A stretch of DNA of 63,998 nucleotides, filler included, from Ministeria vibrans ATCC 50519 (GCA_943704425.1; 7 parts of 7 records of this genome joined end to end with filler, not necessarily neighbours in it), one strand, 5' to 3'; counted from the first letter of the whole stretch, positions 28,381 to 44,009 are shown. Notes: generated from the sequence alone by a model not told the origin. Numbers and translations: made by a program.

Positions 28381-28459
28381 CGCTACGGCGATGTCATCGA
28401 GAGCCATTCCATCCGCATCCACCTACCACACACACACACACACGCACACACACACACAT

Positions 28460-28503
<44 letters not shown>

Positions 28504-30056
28504 TCAGTGAGACACACTCTCGATTGAGGAAGAAATATTTACTGGTTGCGTCGGAGGTGCTCTGCGAGAGGGACAGGGAGGCATCGCGTGTGCCGTGAGA
28601 GAGGAGAAAGGAGCACGACGACGATGACTGGTGGGTAGTAAAGAGGGAGAGAAGCGAGTGGAGCAGATGAAAGATGTGCGGGGGACGGAAGGGCATAGGA
28701 GTCGGAGTGGGAGGAGCCGGGTGGACGCGTAAAAGCTTGCCGTTGACGGGATTAACGCGCGCCACAAGCACAGACGACAAAGATGCTGGCGTGGCGTGAG
28801 AGAGGAGAAGACGGTGAAGCCAAATAAGAACCGTCTCGCGTGCAGTAAAGGATTCACTGCCCATCTCTGGGTGGTACTCCATTTTGGTCAGGAGCACCGT
28901 CTCCGTTGCCGGCTGCTCATCTTCGTCACTCACACCGTCCACTCGACTGCGCACAAGCACACGAAGACCATCGGAGAAGGCCCACACATTGTAAACATGA
29001 GTGGGCGCTGTGCAACAGTCTCTGTCTACAGCAACCTCGCGTGCGCGATGGTCGTAGTGCTCGTGCGCCCACTCGCGCGCACTCAGTTCAGCCCGCACCA
29101 CGGGCGCGTCCACACACACCAGACGACGACGAGACCGGCTCGCTTCCTCTGACTGCGGTCCAGTGGGATCTGCGTCGTCGTCGTGGATCACCACTGGTAC
29201 GTCCCATCGTTCGTCAAACAGCCGTGCGCCGGTCAGCGCCAGCACCTCCAACACCTCGTCGCAAACGACTGCCGCACATCCGTGTGCCTTGGCCAGCTCG
29301 TGTGCTTTTGCGTCCTTGCTTATTGCAGCCAGCTGCTGTGGCAAGGCACTGGTGTCCTTCGCCAAGGTCTGCTCGTCGCAGAGTAACTTGGATCCAATGG
29401 GAAATGTCTCGCAAAAAGGTCCAGGCAGCACACCAGAGTGTCCCACCGTCCCACGCCATGCAAACGTATCGGCGGCACTTCCCACGTCTGCAAAGGCGCT
29501 GTGAGTCGACAAAAACTGGTAGAAGCGAGGCAGCGAGGTGGTGACGCTCTCTTTGGCGCGCGCAATGCGCCGTTGAATGCACGTTCGAACGGACGACGGC
29601 AATTTGAAGTAGCGCTCGCGATTGGCCACGGCCGCACGACGTTGATCGCCACAGTACAGCTCCTGTTCCGCCTCCACACGCCCCTTCAACGCTTGATAAA
29701 CCTTTTCCTCGTCGGTCGTCAGCGACAACGCACTGCGCAGCGACAGGAACGACGCGTGTTCATCGGCCGACAATTGTGAAAAGCGACGCGACAAATGAAT
29801 CTGCTGCTGTTTGCGCGTCGACGACGCGCTATCCTCGGCGGCCGTCGTCAATTCAACTGCGGCAGCGTCCGCCTTGGCATGCGCGGCCCATTGCATGCGA
29901 AGGAGCGGCACATCCGGCACATCGTCAACATCGATGGGTTCATCCGACGCACTCTCATCCGTCGGCCTAACAAACAAAAGCCGCATCAATCAACGCACCC
30001 TACACTTCCCACTACTACTTTGGCTACCATTCGAGAACATCAACTTCATCAGACAT
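28381..30056 (-). CDS. ICE2: Little elongation complex subunit 2 (ICE2/NARG2)-like, 3' truncated at scaffold end
   Basis: YNVWAFSDGLRVLVRS...LLTKMEYHPEMGSESFTARETVLIW...VARVNP resembles the NARG2_C domain. N-terminal SRRFSQLSADEH. Confidence 0.65.
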
Positions 30057-30325: not shown

Positions 30326-31259
30326 CTAGAGGTTCTCGGCCCACTCAAAATGACGATGAAGCCAGTCGGCGTACCAGTTACGCGTGTTGTGGGGAGACTG
30401 ACGCTGTACGCTCTGAGGAGCGACTTGGTAAAGGGCACGGAGGGGCGCCAGAGAGAGATGGGCCAGGTGGTGACGCACTGTGTTGGCATAGCACGACGCG
30501 ACGACACCATCCACCACAATGGTTCCTTCCATTGTTGCCGGTGCAAAGGCATCGGTGTCAACGGTGCGCGACACGCTAGTGATGTGGACAGAACGCGAAG
30601 TGGCCTCCGTCGCATTGGGGGTAAACAGGAGCGCGTCGCCCTCGGTCACTTGGTGCGCCAGCATGGGTACAAAGTGCGAGTGACCGTTGCGTCGAACAAA
30701 GAGAGTGTGAAGCGGTGTGACACGGAGCACGCCGTTGCCCGAGTGCGCCAAGTCCAAGTAAGAGATCTTGCTGTCCTTTTTTGCGTCCAGAAACGCATAC
30801 ACCTCGCTAAATCGTGCCTTCTCTCCCTCTGACGGAGTGCTCACTTGAACACGGTCGCCCACGCGCAGGTCGCGAATCGGCACGGTCAAGCCGGACTGAG
30901 AGAGGGGAAAGAGAAAAGAGGAAGTTCAGCGATGGAAAAAGAAAGAGAGAGAGAGAGAGAAATAGAGAGAGAGAGAGAACCTCCAGGAGAACGGACGAGG
31001 AGCCTGGGAAACAGCTGGGGTCACTGTACACCTGATCAGGCCATCGGGGAGAAAAGAAGACGAAACAAAGAAAACGAGTGAGTCAGCGCTTTTCTTTTTT
31101 TTAACGAGTCGTTTGTTTTTGCATTACCTCACAGCCCCACTTGTTGCAAAAGCCAGTGCCAACATCCGTGCAAGAGCAGGAAGTCGTGTAGATTCGGTAC
31201 GCAGCGAGCGACGGCGCGACAACGGCGAGGAGAAGCGTAAGAAGCAAAACTGTTCGCAT
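30326..31259 (-). CDS. Secreted hedgehog-related Hog (Hint + sterol-recognition region) protein with a tiny Cys-rich N-domain; exons 31259-31128, 31031-30981, 30895-30326
   Basis: Signal peptide; S|CFPG, DLRVGDRV, FSEVYAFLD, VTPLHTLF, FAPATMEGTIVVDGVVASCYA, HHLAHLSLAPLR, WYADWL. All junctions are phase-0 GT-AG. Confidence 0.92.
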
Positions 31260-31527
31260 ACTACATAGCAAAGAGAGAGAGAGAGAGCGGACGAAAATTA
31301 TTTTGCGCCCTTCTTTATTGCGTCTCAAGCGAGAGACCCATCGCAAGGCCCATCTCTAATCTTCTCTCTCTCTACCTTGTAAAAAAGGTTCTTTAACGAT
31401 AAAAAAAAATGAACTTTTTAAATCTTATGAGTTATTCTTATCGCTCTTCAATCATGATGACCAAACATTTTTGGTCAATGATCAATTGCTCTTCGTTTCC
31501 CAGTCATTTCCCCCCACCTCAACACAC

Positions 31528-32108
31528 ATGCTGATCAAAGCTCTCGCCAAAGCGTTCCGCGTCCACGCCGAGACACAGGAGTCGGCGTCGCTCGACAATG
31601 GCTATGTGGACTCGCAGTACAGTCGGACGGCCGTCAAAGCGATTGAGACGACATACTCTGCCGCACAGGGACATATCGATACGGATGTATGCGTCATTGG
31701 CGGGGGCTTTGCGGGTCTTGGGACTGCGCTGAGTTTGGCCGAGAAGAGTGCCACTGTGGTGTTGGTGAGAAGAGAAAGAGAGAGAGAAACGATGGAAGAG
31801 TGATTCTCACGGAGTGTGTTCAGCTGGAAAGAGATCGCATTGCGAGTCAGGCGAGTGGGCGCAACGGCGGCTTTGTACTGGAAGGCTTTCAGGTGGAGCC
31901 CGAGGACCTGCTGGACGAGGTGAAGCCTTCTGTCGCGCGTGAGCTCTACGCTCTTTCGGTGATGGGCCACCGTCTGCTGCGCGATCGCATTCGTCAGTAC
32001 AGTATTGAGTGCGACGTTGAGGTATGCTGCAACGTCTCGGGCGTGTGCAATCTCTCTCTCTCTCTATCACTTTGTTTCTCTTTCTCTATCACTTTGTTTC
32101 TTTCTCCC

Positions 32109-32207
<99 letters not shown>

Positions 32208-33317
32208 TCTCTATCTTCTTCTTTCTCAACTGGGGCATCTTTTCTGTAGGACTCGGGCGCACTGACTGTGTCGGTCTTCAAGAATGGCTATGACGACGCA
32301 AAGGAATGTGTAGAGCTGGTGAACGAGACGTACGGGACAGCCTTGGAAGTGTGGCCTGCGTCCAAAGTGCGCGAGCTGTATGCGTCAGACACGTACCATC
32401 ACGGTGTATTTGATCCCTCAGGTGAGAACACATTTTAGATATTATTAGTATATTCGGCTCAATGCATGCGCTGTTCAGGATACACAGTGCACCCGTTGAA
32501 TTTGGGGTTGGGTCTGGCACGCGTGTGCAGTACGCTTGGCGTGCGAATCCACGAACACAGCGAAGCAGTCTCCGTCTCCCCCAACGACGCTAGCCAGAAC
32601 ACCACGGGTGGTCGTTCTCGACGGTGGGTGGTGACGACGGGGAGTGGAGCGCAGGTTCACGCAGACAGTGTAGTGCTGGCTGGAAGCATTGGGATGACCG
32701 AGGCTTTGGCGGGCCCTGTGCAGCGCGCCTGTGTCCCCGTCTACACCTACATCATGGTCACCGAGCCCCTTCCCTCTGCTGTCCTCCGCTCTGCCATCAA
32801 TGCTCCTTACTCCGTCTGCGACGATCGCTATGCCCTCAATTACTTCCGCCCATTGGCCGACGGGCGCATTCTGTGGGGTGGCTTTGCGACGCCCGAGCCC
32901 ATCACGGACGAGGAACAGCTGCGCGCACAGCTGGAAGCAGATCTGCTCAAGGTGTTTCCACAGCTGACGGGCCATGTACGCTGCGGAACGGCATGGGGCG
33001 GCGCACTGGCCATGGGCCTGCGCCAAATGCCGCTCGTGGGGTGCCTAGACGCACAAGGGGACAAGGACTCCCAGCAGGGCTCCCTGTGGTATCTGACGGG
33101 ATTTGGCGGGCATGGCGTGGCTGCGACACACACGGCGGGCCACCTGGTCGCTTGTGCCATCACCGACCCCTCTGACGCCCGTTGGCGTCTTTTTGCGTCG
33201 CACTTCCCGCTTGAGCCCGCTGCAGTGTTTGGCGCGACGGGCGTGCGCATTGCGTCGTGGTACTACCACACACGCGACGCACTTGCGCTCTGGTGGGACC
33301 GTACCCAAGGCAAATAA
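31528..33317 (+). CDS. FAD-dependent oxidoreductase, DAO family, PuuB/OrdL-like
   Basis: DVCVIGGGFAGL, ASGRNGGF, VHPLNLGLGLA, YIMVTEPL, NYFRPLADGRILWGG, GFGGHGV; 4 exons. Confidence 0.88.
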
Positions 33318-33679: not shown

Positions 33680-33720
<41 letters not shown>

Positions 33721-34451
33721 GATATACCTGATTGATGTGACGTGTCTTAGGAGCCAACGAGGGATCTGCTCCAAGATCGCGGTAGTGTTCGTCGACGTCA
33801 AGCAGCACCAGGTTGAGATGCTTGTCAAAGGCAACGAGATAGCCCTCGAGAACGCCACGAATGCCGCGCGCACGCCGAATGCACACACGCGTGCGACACC
33901 GCGTTTTGAAACATCTATATATTACTGACAGCGGTCCCTTGTCGTGCTCGCACTCCTCCATGCGCATCAGTACGTCCCGTTTTCGTTTTCGACCCCCACC
34001 CGTCGCTCTCCCTTCTTCTCTTTGCTGCTCAGTGCTCTCCTTTGCCTTCTGTGCCTCTCGCGCCAACTTCTCCTCCGCCGCTATCCTCCGTGCCTCCGCC
34101 TCCAATGCACGCTCTTCGTCGGCACGCACCCGTTTCTCTGTCAGACGCAGATCAGACTTATAGTGTGTTTCTTCAGTGACCAACTGAGCGTACCCGCTCG
34201 TTCTTGCTGCGCCCGTCGCTTCTCCAAAGCCTCTTCGCCATCCGTCATCAACAGCCCACTTGCCGCGTACTGTGCCAGGTTGTCAAAGGGCTTCATCTTG
34301 GGAAATGGGAGCACCACAGCACTGCAAAACACACACACACACATGAGAAACCATCTGAGGAACGCATCTCCAGTTCCTACTTGGAATAGAGCGCTCGAAG
34401 CGGATCAAATCGCTCGTCGGTTACGTCCAACGAGGGGCTCTGTGACGACAT
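33573..34451 (-). CDS. LSM11: U7 snRNP-specific Sm-like protein Lsm11
   Basis: N-terminal FDPLRALY and PFDNLAQY motifs; GPLSVI...GYLVAFDKHLNLVLLDVDE (Sm1); RHINQLFLRGDNVV (Sm2). Confidence 0.85.
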
Positions 34452-34609: not shown

Positions 34610-37074
34610 ATGGCAAGCGCACCAGGTGACGCAGCCAGCGTGATTGCGGTATGAATAGAAACCGTTTCGGGATATTTCGGTGTCGCCTTGACAACGCTGC
34701 TCGCTCCTCTGGAATTCGCCGCATCCTGATCGCTTCTCCCTCTTGACAGGCTCTCCAGCGCGAATTGAATGCTCTTGCTGACGACAATCGTTCGACACGA
34801 AAGCGAAGTCTTCTCAAAATCCGTCAGTTGACAGTCGACCAACTTTCCAACGACGAGATTCTTCACACCGTCTTCAGCGACCCTTCCGTTGCCCGTCCCA
34901 TCATCAAGTGTTTTGAAGATCCTCTTGAGAAATGCCGTGAGCTCTCTGCGATCATGATTGGCGAGTAATGCTGTTGAAAATCAATCACGTTTCGGCAATG
35001 TGCTGACGCGAATGCCTTGGATCAATTTAGAGTTCTTGTCCGATCTCCGCCCACTCTTCACGATCAAGCTCCCTTACTTCTTGGTATGCTTGCTAGGCGT
35101 CTTGCAGAGAAGGATATCGTCGAGCCGTCGGAAGAGGTGCGGCTCGAACTTGTACAGGTGCTGTCGCGTCTTCTCGACTCGTGCGACGCATCGGCTCCCT
35201 CCGTCACCCTCAAAGTCCACGTTGAAGATATGCTTCGAATCCTTGCACGCACCCTCACCGACCCCTACCCAGACATTAAGAAGGTACACCAGACACAAAT
35301 GACGGACGGGACGATCATTCATCTGAGTGTTACGGCAGATGAGCTGTCAGTGCGTTGTGTTGCTCAGTCAGCGGTTTCCCGAGCAGTTTCTGCAACAGGC
35401 AGAGCACCTCTCGATGCCACTCCTCACACTTCTTTCTCACCAACACTCGCGTGTGCGACTCGCTGCAGTACTCGTACGAACACACAAGCACACATACAAT
35501 TCACACACGCACACACCACAAAGACACACGCACACCACAAAGACACACGCACACCACAAAGACACACGCACACCACAAGACACACGCACACCACAAAGAC
35601 ACACACACTCCATAAAGACACACGCGCACCACAAAGACACACACACGCCACAAAGACACTCACACACCACAAAGACACACGCATACCACAAGACACACGC
35701 ACACCACAAAGACACACGCGCACCACAAAGACACACACACGCCACAAAAACACTCACACACCATAAAGACACCCCACAAAGACACACACACATACACAAA
35801 GAGAATATTATTTGTGTACATCGTTAATCAGTGACAACAGGGATTAGGGGCATTTTTGGAGCAAGGGACAACGAACCACGAGACGATACGCACGACACTG
35901 GAACAGATGGGACGCGCCACGATGGACGCACATTCGAGTGTGCGCAATGCACTGACGAGTGTCACTGAGCGACTGCTGACGGTCCAGCGCGATCGGTATT
36001 CGCACTTTGCACCTCTGTTACTTGTGCTGTTGCCGCAGCTCAGCGACGAGTACGCCTCGAATGTGACGCACGCCGCTGCAGCACTTGCGCACGCAGGCAG
36101 AGTGTACGCAGAGGAGAACCGCACGCACCTCAAAGACGCATGTGACTGGGAGCAGTCGGACCCGAGCGCACCCGAGTGGGCTCAGGTAGGCGCGGGGGCC
36201 ACGGCGCTGGTGCACGCTCACTCCAAGGCACTCCTCGACTCTCTTTTGCCTCTACTCACCGACTGGGCACTTCCCGTCCGCACCCACACTCTCCGCATAC
36301 TCTCCACTGTGCTCCATCTCTTACGCTCCCACGCCACTCCCCACCTGGACCGCCTTTTCATGGCCCTCCGTGCTCCCCTTGCCGACTCCCTTGCGCCTCT
36401 TGCCCTCGACTGCATCGCCGTGCTGGGCCGCCACATTCCCCTTGCCACAACCGTCCCTCTCCTCCTCCCTCGCCTCATCCGTCCCCCGTCCGACTCCCCC
36501 TCCCACCCCACTGCTACCCTTCGCTTCCTTCGTGCCCTCCTCGACGCCACCACCTCCTCTTCCTCCCTGCCCATCTCCACTGCCCCTCTCGAGACACTTT
36601 TGACTACCCTCACCACCGACACCGCACTCACCGCTAGCGACCACACTCCGCTTCTTGAGGCCCTTGCACTGCTCCTGCGCTCCCTCGCCCCACACACCCC
36701 TCCACATCTCCACCATCATCTCTTCTTTATTGCTATTGCCCTCCTCGCCACTCACACCCCGCACCTTGTTGACTCTGCACACGCCTCTCTTCGCATCCTC
36801 AGTGACCCTCCAGCACCCCTCTTTGCCCGCCATTTCCTCCCCACCCTCTCCCTTATCCTCTCCGACTGCCCCGTTCGCCATCTATCGCCCCCCTCCGCCT
36901 GGCACTCCTCCTCCCACTCCCTCCGTCTCACTCTTGCCCTGCTTGCTTCCCCTGATGCCCCCCTTGCAGACCACCTGGAGCCCGTTCTCAACCTCTTCTC
37001 GCTTACTCTCGACACTTCACGCTCGCCCGAACTCCGTCTCAAGTACAAAGCGAGAGAGAAAGAGAGAGAGAGAA

Positions 37075-37105
<31 letters not shown>

Positions 37106-38221
37106 ACGATGAAGAGAGAATGAGGGAGAGAGCGAGGACGATGAAGAAAGAACCAACAAAGTGCGAGAGACTCGGTTCTGACACCCAACCTTCACAATGT
37201 ATGATGTAGAATGTTCTCACTGCTGTCGCACCTCCTCGAGCACGCGGAGACAACCCTTGACGCACACGGCGGTCTTGTAGCTCACACTTCAACTCTCATC
37301 GAGTCTATCCTCCTTCCCAACTGCACCTGGCACAGTGGCCAGACAGCCTGTGCCATTCGCACTGCCGCCCTGTCTTCCCTCTGGTCCCTCCTACGACCCC
37401 TCCCTCCCTCCTCCACGTCGTCTCCCGCCCTACAACCCCTTCTTCCCCGCCTCCTCTCCACCCTCCTTGGCTGCATTGATGACCGTAGCTCACTCACCCG
37501 CTCCGTGGTCCTTCTCGTCCTTCAACGTCTCCTCCAAAGCACCTCTCTGACTCGTACGCTACGCTTCATGAGACTTTTTTCTCCATTCACATTTTTTTTG
37601 TTTGTTTCACGTTTTTTTTTTTTTTTCGTGGCCACAGCGGATCAACTGCACTCGCTCTACCCCGACCTCATCAAGCGCCTCGACGACCACGACGACCAGG
37701 TGCGCGTCGAGGCCATCCGGTCGTGCCGCCACTTCGTCTGCGCTCTTCCCTCCGACTACGACTCCTGCCTCTACGCCGCGCACCTGGACGCCCTCTTCTC
37801 TGCTCTCTTTGTTCATCTTGACGATCCAGACGAGTCAGTGCAGGTACGCATTGATGTTTGTGTTGGCGGTTAAGAGAAAAAAAAAGTTTGTTTTTGTGGT
37901 GGTGTTTCACTCTCTCTGAGTGTGTGGAAGTTGTGGGCGTAAACCGTGCGATGCGCAGCGACCACTGGTGTTGTATACGAGTGTTGTGTGTGGTGGACGG
38001 GCAAGGAAGGGCCTGTTGCGGTGTTTTGCGGTGCACCACGGAGGGGGCATATGGTGTCGTCTTCTCATCGTCGTTTTTCCCTCCAGGCGGGCGTGCTGGA
38101 GGCGCTGAAGGCTGCTGCGCCGCGGCATGCACAGGATATGGTGGAGCATGTTGCACAGGCGCGCACTCGCCATCGTACCATGGCGTATTTGGATGCACTG
38201 GAGGAGACAATGAAATCTTGA
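34610..38221 (+). CDS. DNAAF5: Dynein axonemal assembly factor 5 (HEATR2)
   Basis: DDNRSTRKRSL, DPLEKCRELS, EPSEEVRLELV, DPYPDIKK, WHSGQTACAIRTAA, YPDLIKRLDDHDDQVR, FVHLDDPD. Confidence 0.85.
35505..35795. repeat. Intronic CACACCACAAAGACACAC minisatellite; same family in reverse orientation at ~10500-10595
   Basis: Directly visible ~19-nt repeat units. Confidence 0.85.
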
Positions 38222-39865: not shown

Positions 39866-40753
39866 GTGTGTGCGGTCAAAGTGCCACCGACATCACAGGC
39901 AAAGCCGTTTGTGTGCAGTGAATGCCCCGCACGCTTTTGCGCGCGCTGGCGATTGAAGCGTCACGTACGCACTCATGGCATTGAGCTGGAGGTGACGCCG
40001 GGACGTGAGCTGCGCCCTTGCTCTATGTGTCACAAAATGTACCGCTCGTACAAAACACTGCGTCAGCACATGTTTAGCGTGCACAATGTGGCGTTGGAGA
40101 GCGCAGGACGCACAAGTGGCAGTAGTCCAGGGGGAAGCAGCGGGGATGCGGCGCAGGACGACGACAACGACGAGGAGGTGGAAGAAGAAGAGGACGAGGA
40201 CGAGTCGCGGGAAGAGGAAGAGGAGGGCAACACTGAAACAGACACACGCTATGCAACCCCCTCCACCTCCTTCCAAACCCTCCCTCGAACCCAATCGGAG
40301 TCTCAAACAATGAAAGCTATCGGGCAGGTTCCCGATCGTCACCACCAGCTTCAGCGTCAGCAGCATGAGCGAAATATGCACCTCAAAAACGAACAACAAC
40401 AGCAGCAGCAACAGCAGCAGCAGCAGCAGCAGCAACAACAACAACAACAACAACATGACTTTTACCAGATGATTGGATTGCTTTCTTCCCGCATCGACGA
40501 GCTGCATCGTGAAATGCACTTCCTCAAACAACAACTCGCCAGCGCCCTGCAGCCCCAACTCCAATCGCACTACCCGCCTCCCTACAGCCATGTGATCTCC
40601 CACGCACCGTCCAGGAGTGCTGCTCCCTCCGTCCCTCCTCCTCCTCCTTCCATTCACACTTCACCGCCCCTTCCCCCTCCCCTTTCAGCCTACCCTCACT
40701 CCTCTCTTCCCCTCTCGACTCGCTGGACCCCCACTTCCTATATTTCCCAATGA
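39866..40753 (+). CDS. C2H2 zinc-finger transcription factor (2 fingers, acidic tract, polyQ, coiled coil, Pro-rich tail); 5' exon unresolved
   Basis: KPFVCSECPARF...LKRHVRTH and CSMCHKMY...LRQHMFSVH. Confidence 0.8.
   Translation: MCAVKVPPTSQAKPFVCSECPARFCARWRLKRHVRTHGIELEVTPGRELRPCSMCHKMYRSYKTLRQHMFSVHNVALESAGRTSGSSPGGSSGDAAQDDDNDEEVEEEEDEDESREEEEEGNTETDTRYATPSTSFQTLPRTQSESQTMKAIGQVPDRHHQLQRQQHERNMHLKNEQQQQQQQQQQQQQQQQQQQQHDFYQMIGLLSSRIDELHREMHFLKQQLASALQPQLQSHYPPPYSHVISHAPSRSAAPSVPPPPPSIHTSPPLPPPLSAYPHSSLPLSTRWTPTSYISQ

Positions 40754-40996: not shown

Positions 40997-44009
<3,013 letters not shown>

What the first reader, a model, noticed from the sequence alone, without database searches (positions are those of the whole stretch)
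30326..31259. Minimal hedgehog-like precursor predicted to release a ~30-aa, 4-Cys, sterol-linked secreted peptide
Seen: three phase-0 exons give a signal peptide, then YRIYTTSCSCTDVGTGFCNKWGCEVYSDPS, then a complete Hog module starting CFPG. Every residue needed for Hedgehog autoprocessing is intact: Cys1, TxxH (TPLH), the sterol-activating Asp (YAFLD), ASCYA, and a sterol-recognition region (HHLAHLSLAPLR...WYADWL). Established: Hog modules self-cleave before Cys1 and esterify a sterol to the N-fragment. Protist Hog proteins are known but generally carry much larger N-domains. Inference: the product is a disulfide-bonded lipopeptide mini-ligand with no Hedge domain, a candidate sterolated peptide signal or toxin in a unicellular animal relative. 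The ORF track splits it into three pieces, so it is easily missed.
Basis: partly seen in the sequence, partly recalled or inferred. Interest (0 to 1): 0.8.

Follow-up and report, generated by a model that had tools for sequence, protein, structure and literature searches.

The report
Short-cargo Hedgehog-type self-cleaving precursor gene
A small, apparently unannotated three-exon gene in a probably animal-related flagellated protist encodes a secreted precursor in which a complete Hedgehog-type self-cleaving (Hog) module carries only a ~30-residue four-cysteine peptide; this short-cargo layout is already known from nematodes, so it is a new member of a known kind rather than a new kind.

Summary
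On the minus strand, three phase-0 exons with GT..AG introns (31259-31128, 31031-30981, 30895-30326) encode a signal peptide, a 30-31-residue peptide with four Cys, and a full Hint+SRR (Hog) module starting at CFPG. Exon 3 alone hits Pfam Hint at E 4.7e-35. It aligns with Drosophila Hedgehog so that the Asp base, TxxH, the SCY cysteine and both SRR helices are in place. It folds (pLDDT 92) into a Hint core plus C-terminal helices, with Hh-C as best PDB match.

A divergently transcribed gene starts 268 nt upstream of the ATG, so a larger N-domain is unlikely.

The novelty claim is overstated. Bürglin (2008) described "Short-hog" proteins with predicted 15-, 25- and 34-residue N-peptides, and protist Hogs with signal peptides and Cys-containing N-termini.

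Two things may be new:
- No orthologue closer than ~43% identity exists among 1.84 billion representative proteins, apart from a near-identical metagenome contig.
- The cargo motif CxC…[F/I]CxxWxC, placed 7-9 residues before Cys1, recurs in a euglenid (Ploeotia) transcript and in a metagenome-derived contig.

Sterol transfer is plausible (Hh-type SRR, with NWY instead of HWY) but untested. The joined spliced protein was never built or searched.

The parts
31200..31259 (-). Start codon and predicted signal peptide (first 20 codons of exon 1; the cut may be one residue earlier)
   Evidence: Met-Arg, a 13-residue hydrophobic core, then small residues (SLAA). It is the first in-frame ATG of the ORF 31101..31346. 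Judged by inspection; no predictor was available.
31128..31199 (-). Exon 1 part of the cargo peptide (24 aa), holding all four Cys: CxC, 7 residues, FCxxWxC
   Evidence: BLASTP against P0121 aligns YxTxCxC...FCxxWxC, E 0.003. The motif recurs in P0121 and P0144. Shuffle expectation is 0.0005 against 2 observed.
31032..31127 (-). Intron 1, 96 nt, gt..ag, phase 0, pyrimidine-rich 3' end
   Evidence: Read. It has an in-frame TAA after exon 1 and a TGA at 31085-31083 in exon 2's frame.
30981..31031 (-). Exon 2 (17 aa): last 6 cargo residues (VYSDPS), then Cys1 (codon 31013-31011) and the first 11 residues of the Hint module (CFPGSSSVLLE)
   Evidence: It fills Pfam Hint profile positions ~13-24, which exon 3 lacks.
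30896..30980 (-). Intron 2, 85 nt, gt..ag, CT-microsatellite-rich
   Evidence: Against the near-identical contig L001 it differs at 7 of 85 columns, versus 4 of 621 in exons 2+3.
30485..30895 (-). Exon 3, Hint core (residues 1-137). Asp base codon 30787-30785, Thr 30718-30716 and His 30709-30707 of TPLH, Cys of ASCYA 30493-30491
   Evidence: Pfam PF01079 E 4.7e-35. Drosophila Hh 6td6_B E 1.8e-17 with the residues aligned. Column counts. AF2 pLDDT 92.1. Foldseek top hits 6tyy and 1at0, TMt 0.82-0.83.
30329..30484 (-). Exon 3, SRR-like tail (52 aa): helix 1 LAHLSLAPLR..., a loop, helix 2 NWYADWL...
   Evidence: The Pfam match runs to profile position 209 of 213. Helices are predicted at residues 142-148, 150-158, 160-163 and 174-187. 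H, P and R of helix 1 are conserved in 94-98 of 100 homologues; W and Y in 75 and 88. These are the residues needed for cholesterolysis in human SHH (PMC7242414).
30326..30328 (-). Stop codon TAG
31260..31527 (.). 268-nt intergenic region shared with a divergently transcribed FAD-oxidoreductase (DAO family) gene whose ATG is at 31528 (+)
   Evidence: It leaves no room for further upstream Hog exons.

Best explanation
This is a real, compact gene of 934 bp from ATG to stop, with three exons on the minus strand. It encodes a ~250-residue secreted Hog precursor.

Shown from sequence:
- an N-terminal signal-peptide-like segment;
- a 30-31-residue cargo with four Cys (CxC-x7-FCxxWxC-x7);
- a complete Hedgehog-type autoprocessing module: a Hint fold starting at Cys1 of CFPG, with the Asp, Thr/His and SCY-Cys residues, followed by an SRR-like helix-loop-helix.

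Inferred mechanism, by analogy with Hedgehog:
1. The precursor enters the ER and the signal peptide is removed.
2. Cys1 attacks the preceding Ser carbonyl (N-to-S acyl shift).
3. The thioester is resolved by the 3-beta-hydroxyl of a membrane sterol, positioned by the SRR helices and activated by the Asp.
4. This releases the short, probably disulfide-bonded peptide with a C-terminal sterol ester, plus a free Hog fragment.

The lipopeptide would stay on, or travel between, membranes as a signal or surface tag. The cargo belongs to a small, previously unnamed motif family found in front of other protist or environmental Hog modules. Cleavage is likely. A sterol as the adduct is about an even bet.
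For: - Gene model: canonical phase-0 GT..AG junctions, stops in both introns, and Pfam profile continuity across the exon 2/3 junction.
- Intron 2 diverges about 13 times faster than the exons between the window and contig L001.
- A neighbouring divergent gene starts 268 nt upstream.
- Hint membership: PF01079 E 4.7e-35 against a cut-off of 29.7 bits; Drosophila Hh E 1.8e-17; AF2 pLDDT 92.1; best structural matches are Hh-C 6tyy and 1at0, ahead of inteins.
- Catalytic and SRR residues occupy the conserved columns. The same SRR residues are experimentally required in human SHH (PMC7242414).
- Ser at position -1 occurs naturally in many homologues.
- Cargo motif shared with P0121 (Ploeotia vitrea transcript) and P0144 (intronless 983-nt contig), with similar spacing to Cys1. 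It was 2 of 78 against 0.0005 expected.
Against: - There are no transcript data for this locus, so the exon 1-exon 2 junction rests on sequence logic and on spacing in homologues.
- No signal-peptide predictor was run.
- No non-Hedgehog Hog protein with a demonstrated sterol adduct came up in the papers read here. Bürglin uses the term ARR (adduct recognition region) for the nematode Hh-related proteins for that reason.
- The His of the SRR HWY motif, whose Ala mutant loses cellular cholesterolysis in SHH, is Asn here. Asn is a natural minority variant, 10 of 100.
- The three motif-bearing proteins do not group together in a poorly resolved Hog tree. The regex was defined after seeing the hits. 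BLASTP finds no exon 1 alignment to P0144.
- The host's sterol content is unknown because the organism is not identified.
Confidence: 0.6

Rival explanations
1. The precursor self-cleaves, but the adduct is not a sterol. The thioester is resolved by water or by another nucleophile (another lipid, a small molecule or a protein side chain), so the product is a plain or differently modified secreted Cys-peptide.
For: Bürglin introduced 'ARR' because sterol use is unproven in the nematode Hh-related proteins. The window has NWY instead of the HWY needed in SHH cells. Truncating Drosophila Hh-C after the Hint core still gives proteolysis without cholesterol attachment.
Against: Both SRR helices are present, with the H, P, R and WY residues conserved as in Hedgehog. 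The Asp that aligns with the Hh-C D46 position is kept, where 28% of homologues have His. The view that this Asp activates the sterol rests on my own knowledge of the Hedgehog literature, not on a paper read here.
Confidence: 0.25
2. The N-peptide has no function of its own. It is a short leader or spacer, and the biologically relevant product is the Hog fragment, or the locus is a decaying remnant of a larger Hog gene.
For: The cargo is tiny and has no Pfam match. There is no close orthologue to show purifying selection on it. Contig L001 does not cover exon 1.
Against: All catalytic residues and the reading frame are intact in two near-identical sources. The cargo's four-Cys motif and its spacing to Cys1 recur in two distant proteins, which argues for constraint.
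Confidence: 0.1
3. The gene model is wrong at the 5' end. The Hint module is joined to a different, larger upstream coding region, and exon 1 is a chance ORF.
For: There is no RNA evidence. Exon 1 is only 44 codons.
Against: Exon 2 has an in-frame TGA 51 nt upstream and no ATG, so it needs an upstream exon. Exon 1 offers a start codon, a signal-peptide-like segment, a GT donor in the right phase and a motif homologous to the pre-Hog segment of P0121. A divergent gene begins 268 nt beyond its ATG.
Confidence: 0.05

Closest known systems
Short-hog / Xhog3 proteins of Enoplea nematodes (Xiphinema Shog1, Shog2; Trichinella Xhog3; Bürglin 2008, PMC2362128)
   Same: Signal peptide, a very short predicted processed N-peptide (15, 25, 34 residues) and a Hog module. 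Ts Xhog3 also keeps the Hedgehog-type SRR motifs K and L, and its N-terminus is likewise bounded by an upstream gene.
   Different: They are animal genes. Their sequences were not at hand, so homology of the cargo could not be tested. The window's host is a compact-genome, probably unicellular eukaryote. Its cargo carries a CxC...FCxxWxC motif that is not mentioned for the nematode proteins.
Hedgehog proteins (Drosophila Hh, human SHH); structures 1AT0, 6TYY, 6TD6
   Same: Hint fold; Cys1 in CFPG; the Asp, TxxH and SCY residues; SRR helix-loop-helix with AHxxxAPxR and WY.
   Different: There is no Hedge signalling domain, since the cargo is 30-31 residues instead of ~170. Ser rather than Gly precedes Cys1. 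HWY is NWY. The SRR loop is short. Identity to Hh-C is about 31-32%.
Protist and other non-animal Hog proteins (Cryptosporidium, dinoflagellates, red algae, mosses, jakobids, haptophytes; Bürglin 2008) and choanoflagellate Hoglet
   Same: A secreted N-terminal region followed by a Hog module. N-termini are conserved only within small groups and often carry conserved Cys.
   Different: The full-length examples described have longer N-regions: about 100 residues in Cryptosporidium, and a CBD-like domain plus a ~200-residue Thr stretch in Hoglet. Several lack the motif-J Cys or motif K, both of which the window keeps.
P0121 (Ploeotia vitrea transcript, EukProt EP01006) and P0144 (JGI contig Ga0265460_10428992)
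   Same: Signal peptide, the CxC...[F/I]CxxWxC motif 8-9 residues before Cys1, and a Hog module. P0121 also shares the NWYAxWL variant of SRR helix 2.
   Different: Both have a 45-70-residue spacer between the signal peptide and the motif (Pro-rich in P0121), which the window lacks. Hog identity to the window is only ~30% and they do not group together in the tree.
Inteins and bacterial intein-like domains
   Same: The Hint fold; they are the second tier of structural matches.
   Different: There is no C-extein and no splicing layout, since the protein ends after the SRR. Pfam intein models score far below their cut-offs.

Membership tests
Hog (Hint + SRR/ARR) autoprocessing proteins | Hint module of the Hedgehog type (Pfam PF01079) above the curated cut-off | tested here: met
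   Exon 3 alone: 121.5 bits against a cut-off of 29.7, E 4.7e-35, profile positions 25-209 of 213.
Hog (Hint + SRR/ARR) autoprocessing proteins | Nucleophilic Cys1 at the start of the module (CF[PSA]G) | tested here: met
   Exon 2 encodes CFPG with 11 residues before exon 3, matching the missing profile positions. This depends on the inferred exon 2/3 splice.
Hog (Hint + SRR/ARR) autoprocessing proteins | TxxH block, the Asp aligned with Hh-C D46, and the Cys of the SCY block | tested here: met
   Aligned to Drosophila Hh. Column counts: T 72 / S 28, H 100, D 68 / H 28, C 88 of 100.
Hog (Hint + SRR/ARR) autoprocessing proteins | Hint fold | tested here: met
   AF2 pLDDT 92.1, pTM 0.87. Foldseek top hits are 6tyy and 1at0, E 4e-11 to 1e-10, rmsd ~2 A.
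Hog (Hint + SRR/ARR) autoprocessing proteins | Hedgehog-type sterol recognition region: helix 1 with H, P and R; helix 2 with HWY | tested here: inconclusive
   Helix 1 is fully present. Helix 2 has NWY, Asn replacing a His whose Ala mutant is defective in SHH. Helices are predicted with pLDDT 64-97.
Hog (Hint + SRR/ARR) autoprocessing proteins | Secretory signal peptide on the precursor | tested here: inconclusive
   The n/h/c regions look classic by eye. No predictor was available.
Hog (Hint + SRR/ARR) autoprocessing proteins | Self-cleavage with transfer of the N-fragment to a sterol or other adduct | not testable with these tools
   Needs biochemistry.
Hedgehog proper | N-terminal Hedge signalling domain | tested here: not met
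   Only 30-31 residues lie between the signal peptide and Cys1, and they have no Pfam match.
Inteins | C-extein after the Hint domain, with the splicing layout | tested here: not met
   The ORF stops 52 residues after SCYA, within the SRR-like tail. Intein_splicing scores 13.9 bits against a cut-off of 35.8.
CxC...[F/I]CxxWxC pre-Hog cargo motif (provisional, defined here) | Four Cys with that spacing, a Trp, 7-9 residues upstream of Cys1, behind a signal peptide | tested here: met
   Window, P0121 and P0144. There are only three members and the pattern was defined post hoc.

The most novel reading that the evidence does not exclude
The CxC...[F/I]CxxWxC peptide is an old, conserved cargo of Hog modules. 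It would be shared by a holozoan-like protist, a euglenid-derived transcript and an uncultured eukaryote, and delivered as a sterol-tailed, disulfide-bonded mini-ligand. In that case Hedgehog-style lipopeptide signalling or surface tagging with a defined peptide family would predate, and exist outside, animals. The window's gene would be its minimal form.
Probability: 0.2. Interest if true: 0.75.

Novelty: new member of a known kind. Interest (0 to 1): 0.45.

Why it matters
Hedgehog ligands are the only proteins shown to be covalently cholesterol-modified, and how that chemistry arose is open. A catalytically complete, Hedgehog-type Hint+SRR module from a probable close relative of animals would be a convenient minimal substrate, because its cargo is small enough to synthesise. 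It could be used to test whether non-animal Hog domains transfer sterols and which sterols they accept.

The recurring four-Cys motif gives a concrete peptide family to look for across protist transcriptomes. If sterol transfer is not found, the locus is simply one more unannotated member of the widespread Hog family.

Tried and rejected
- **Degenerate DNA pattern scan.** A pattern for FCxxWxC-x(7-9)-CFxG was run over metagenome contigs.
- **Organism identification.**
  - A search with a DNAAF5 exon gave nothing, probably because of the tool's length filter.
  - Rfam and tRNA scans of the piece were empty.
  - An exact look-up of the DAO exon found nothing on record.
  - A text search for the metagenome BioSample found nothing.
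  - Beta-tubulin gave only an indirect, holozoan-like signal.
- **ESM Atlas look-alikes** of the P0121 motif region scored 0.77-0.78, which is noise level.
- **Hog-domain tree** of 100 sequences. It is poorly resolved (55 of 97 branches open). The window sits on a long branch with L001's protein and the three motif-bearing proteins do not cluster. This neither supports nor excludes common descent of the whole architecture.
- **Second Hint copy or second motif copy** in the 16.5-kb piece: none.
- **Toxin reading:** nothing in the sequence or its relatives points to a toxin, so it was not pursued.
- **Not done by rule:** the three exons were never joined into one protein for any search or fold. 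All searches used single exons by reference.

Full report
**What is there**

The finding's coordinates hold a minus-strand gene.
- Exon 1 (31259-31128) starts at the first in-frame ATG and encodes 44 residues. These are a Met-Arg start, a 13-residue hydrophobic core, small residues (…PSLAA), then 24 residues containing CSC and FCNKWGC. It ends at GAG|gtaatg.
- Exon 2 (31031-30981) follows a pyrimidine-rich tract and cag|. It encodes VYSDPS followed by CFPGSSSVLLE and ends at GAG|gttctc.
- Exon 3 (30895-30326) follows ctctcag| and encodes 189 residues plus TAG.

All junctions are phase 0. Read on from exon 1, intron 1 (96 nt) hits TAA after nine codons. Exon 2's frame has TGA at 31085-31083 and no ATG. 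Intron 2 is 85 nt, so retaining it shifts the frame. An intact protein therefore needs exactly this splicing.

Every search and the fold used single exons by reference.

**Is it more than chance?**

Exon 3 alone scores 121.5 bits (E 4.7e-35) on Pfam Hint PF01079, covering profile positions 25-209 of 213. In intronless relatives Cys1 lies at about profile position 13. The 11 residues of exon 2 from Cys1 onward therefore fill the gap, which is strong support for the exon 2/3 junction.

A near-identical ENA metagenome contig (L001) begins inside intron 1. It differs from the window at 4 of 621 exon columns but 7 of 85 intron-2 columns, as expected for an intron, although part of that is microsatellite slippage.

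Upstream, a divergently oriented FAD-oxidoreductase gene has its ATG at 31528, only 268 nt from the Hog ATG. Downstream, a NARG2_C-containing ORF starts by 29989. There is no room for a larger N-terminal domain nearby.

**The Hog module**

phmmer against PDB sequences finds Drosophila Hedgehog (6td6_B, E 1.8e-17). The alignment runs through the Hint core into the first SRR helix.

In a 100-sequence alignment (A2) the window carries the conserved residue in each key column.

| Window residue | Block | Column make-up (of 100) |
|---|---|---|
| Asp | AFLD | D 68, H 28 |
| Thr / His | TPLH | T 72 / S 28; H 100 |
| Cys | ASCYA | C 88 |
| H, P, R | LAHLSLAPLR | 94, 98, 97 |
| W, Y | NWY | 75, 88 |

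The Asp aligns with the Hh-C position changed in the PDB entry titled mutant D46H (6tyy). The one deviation is Asn where 76% of homologues have the His of HWY; Asn occurs in 10%.

Purohit et al. 2020 (PMC7242414) showed that in human SHH, H374, F377 and R381 of helix 1 and each residue of HWY in helix 2 are needed for cellular cholesterolysis. They also showed that the loop between the helices is dispensable. The window has H, L, P and R in helix 1 and a short loop.

AlphaFold2 on exon 3 with A2 gives pLDDT 92.1 and pTM 0.87. The model is a beta-rich core followed by helices at 142-148, 150-158, 160-163 and 174-187. Foldseek ranks Hh-C (6tyy, 1at0; TMt 0.82-0.83, rmsd ~2 Å) first, then inteins. 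So this is a Hedgehog-type Hog domain. It is not an intein: there is no C-extein, and the intein Pfam model scores far below its cut-off.

**The cargo**

Between the signal-peptide-like segment and Cys1 lie 30 residues (cut after LAA) or 31 (cut after SLA). They have no Pfam hit.

Among the 150 best of 2,656 Hint hits in 1.84 billion representative proteins, I located Cys1 in each and read the upstream segments. Two proteins carry the same pattern just before Cys1.
- P0121: CNC, 15 residues, FCGAWNC, 8 residues, then CFSG.
- P0144: CYC, 13 residues, ICTHWQC, 9 residues, then CFAG.
- Window: CSC, 7 residues, FCNKWGC, 7 residues, then CFPG.

A regex for this pattern at that position matches 2 of 78 hits with N-segments of at least 30 residues, against 0.0005 expected from shuffled segments. 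The regex was written after seeing the hits.

BLASTP of exon 1 against P0121 aligns the motif at E 0.003. Against P0144 it finds nothing.

P0121 is a Trinity transcript assigned to the euglenid Ploeotia vitrea in EukProt. P0144 is a complete ORF on an intronless 983-nt JGI contig. Both have signal-peptide-like starts and a 45-70-residue spacer that the window lacks. P0121 also shares the NWYAxWL form of SRR helix 2.

The similar spacing from the last motif Cys to Cys1 (7, against 8 and 9) in these intronless sequences indirectly supports the window's exon 1/2 junction. A quick ML tree of the Hog domains is poorly resolved and does not group the three. Common descent of the whole architecture, convergence, and contamination of the Ploeotia transcriptome all remain possible.

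**How unusual is it?**

Only the L001 protein reaches E ≤ 1e-30. Every other hit is at most ~43% identical. No full-length annotated version of this gene appears, so the gene looks unannotated and has no sequenced close orthologue.

The layout, however, is not new.
- Bürglin 2008 (PMC2362128) describes Trichinella Xhog3, whose predicted processed N-peptide is 34 residues, bounded by an upstream gene, with Hedgehog-type SRR motifs K and L. It also describes Xiphinema Shog1 (15 residues) and Shog2 (25 residues).
- The same paper describes protist Hog proteins with signal peptides and Cys-containing N-termini, and proposes an ancestral secreted Ur-Hog that may add a sterol.
- In my hit list, animal Hog proteins with short Cys-rich N-segments also occur: Patella caerulea and Rotaria.
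- Among hits with a Met start and hydrophobic N-terminus, the shortest pre-Cys1 segments are 60-61 residues (P0061, P0116), against 50 in the window.

The window is therefore at the short end, but within a known kind.

**Host**

The 16.5-kb piece is gene-dense and eukaryotic.
- It holds NARG2_C, DAO-family, LSM, DNAAF5 (so a ciliated or flagellated organism), C2H2 zinc-finger and beta-tubulin genes.
- The beta-tubulin fragment is 95-97% identical to animal beta-tubulins. It is about 89% identical to the dinoflagellate and green-algal entries in the same list.
- From my own knowledge, that level is typical of holozoans.
- About seven genes in 16.5 kb argues for a unicellular, compact genome.

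The organism could not be named.

**Mechanism and odds**

Shown: the gene structure, the Hint fold, the catalytic and SRR residues, and the cargo motif.

Inferred from Hedgehog biochemistry: ER entry, an N-to-S acyl shift at Ser|Cys1, thioester resolution by a sterol hydroxyl, and release of a sterol-esterified, disulfide-bonded peptide.

My estimates are:
- self-cleavage likely, about 0.75;
- a sterol as the adduct about even;
- the combined statement 0.6.

Rivals are a non-sterol or hydrolytic resolution (0.25), a functionless leader or relic (0.1) and a wrong 5' model (0.05). Nothing suggests a toxin.

**Verdict**

This is a new, unannotated member of the known Hog / short-hog kind. The modest new lead is a recurring four-Cys cargo motif. 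Interest is moderate.

Noticed in passing
window 40997-44008 (-): A beta-tubulin gene is interrupted by a 988-N assembly gap (42102-43089). The same ~37 codons (…[12 protein letters not shown]…AELVD) are encoded on both sides of the gap, which looks like an assembly duplication. Its first intron follows codon 19, is about 575 nt long and appears to use a GC donor (AAG|gcaagc).
   Followed up: partly
window 35017-37873 (+): A DNAAF5-like (dynein axonemal assembly factor 5) gene lies in several ORF pieces. One junction region (about 35440-35800) is an ACAC/CACA-rich microsatellite that reads as HTHTTKTH repeats in one frame and CVCVCV on the other strand. It is probably an intron.
   Followed up: no
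window 31528-33317 (+): A DAO-family FAD-dependent oxidoreductase gene is transcribed divergently from the Hog gene, with only 268 nt between the two ATGs. This is a possible shared bidirectional promoter.
   Followed up: no
window 28394-29989 (-): A long ORF with a NARG2_C (ICE2-like) domain lies directly downstream of the Hog gene on the same strand. Its 3' part runs into (GT)n that reads as CVCVCV.
   Followed up: no
window 33716-34183 (-) and 39866-40753 (+): An LSM-domain ORF with a charged N-terminal extension, and a C2H2 zinc-finger ORF with a run of 21 Gln.
   Followed up: partly
L001 (ENA ERZ23497376, SCHR19-1_SAMN09406036 scaffold_4021): A 2.6-kb metagenome contig is 97-98% identical to window 28.4-31.04 kb, so the same or a sister strain occurs in an environmental or host-associated sample. 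It carries three non-synonymous differences in the Hog gene (Ser to Phe in exon 2; Arg to Leu and Thr to Ser in exon 3).
   Followed up: partly
P0062/P0156 (Patella caerulea), P0116 (Rotaria sp.): Annotated animal 'Hint domain-containing' proteins have a hydrophobic N-terminal start and only ~40-50 Cys-rich residues before Cys1 (some with CxC). Short-cargo Hog proteins seem to be more widespread in animals than the nematode cases in the literature. P0092 (Pycnogonum litorale) also has a short Cys-rich N-segment but no hydrophobic start.
   Followed up: no
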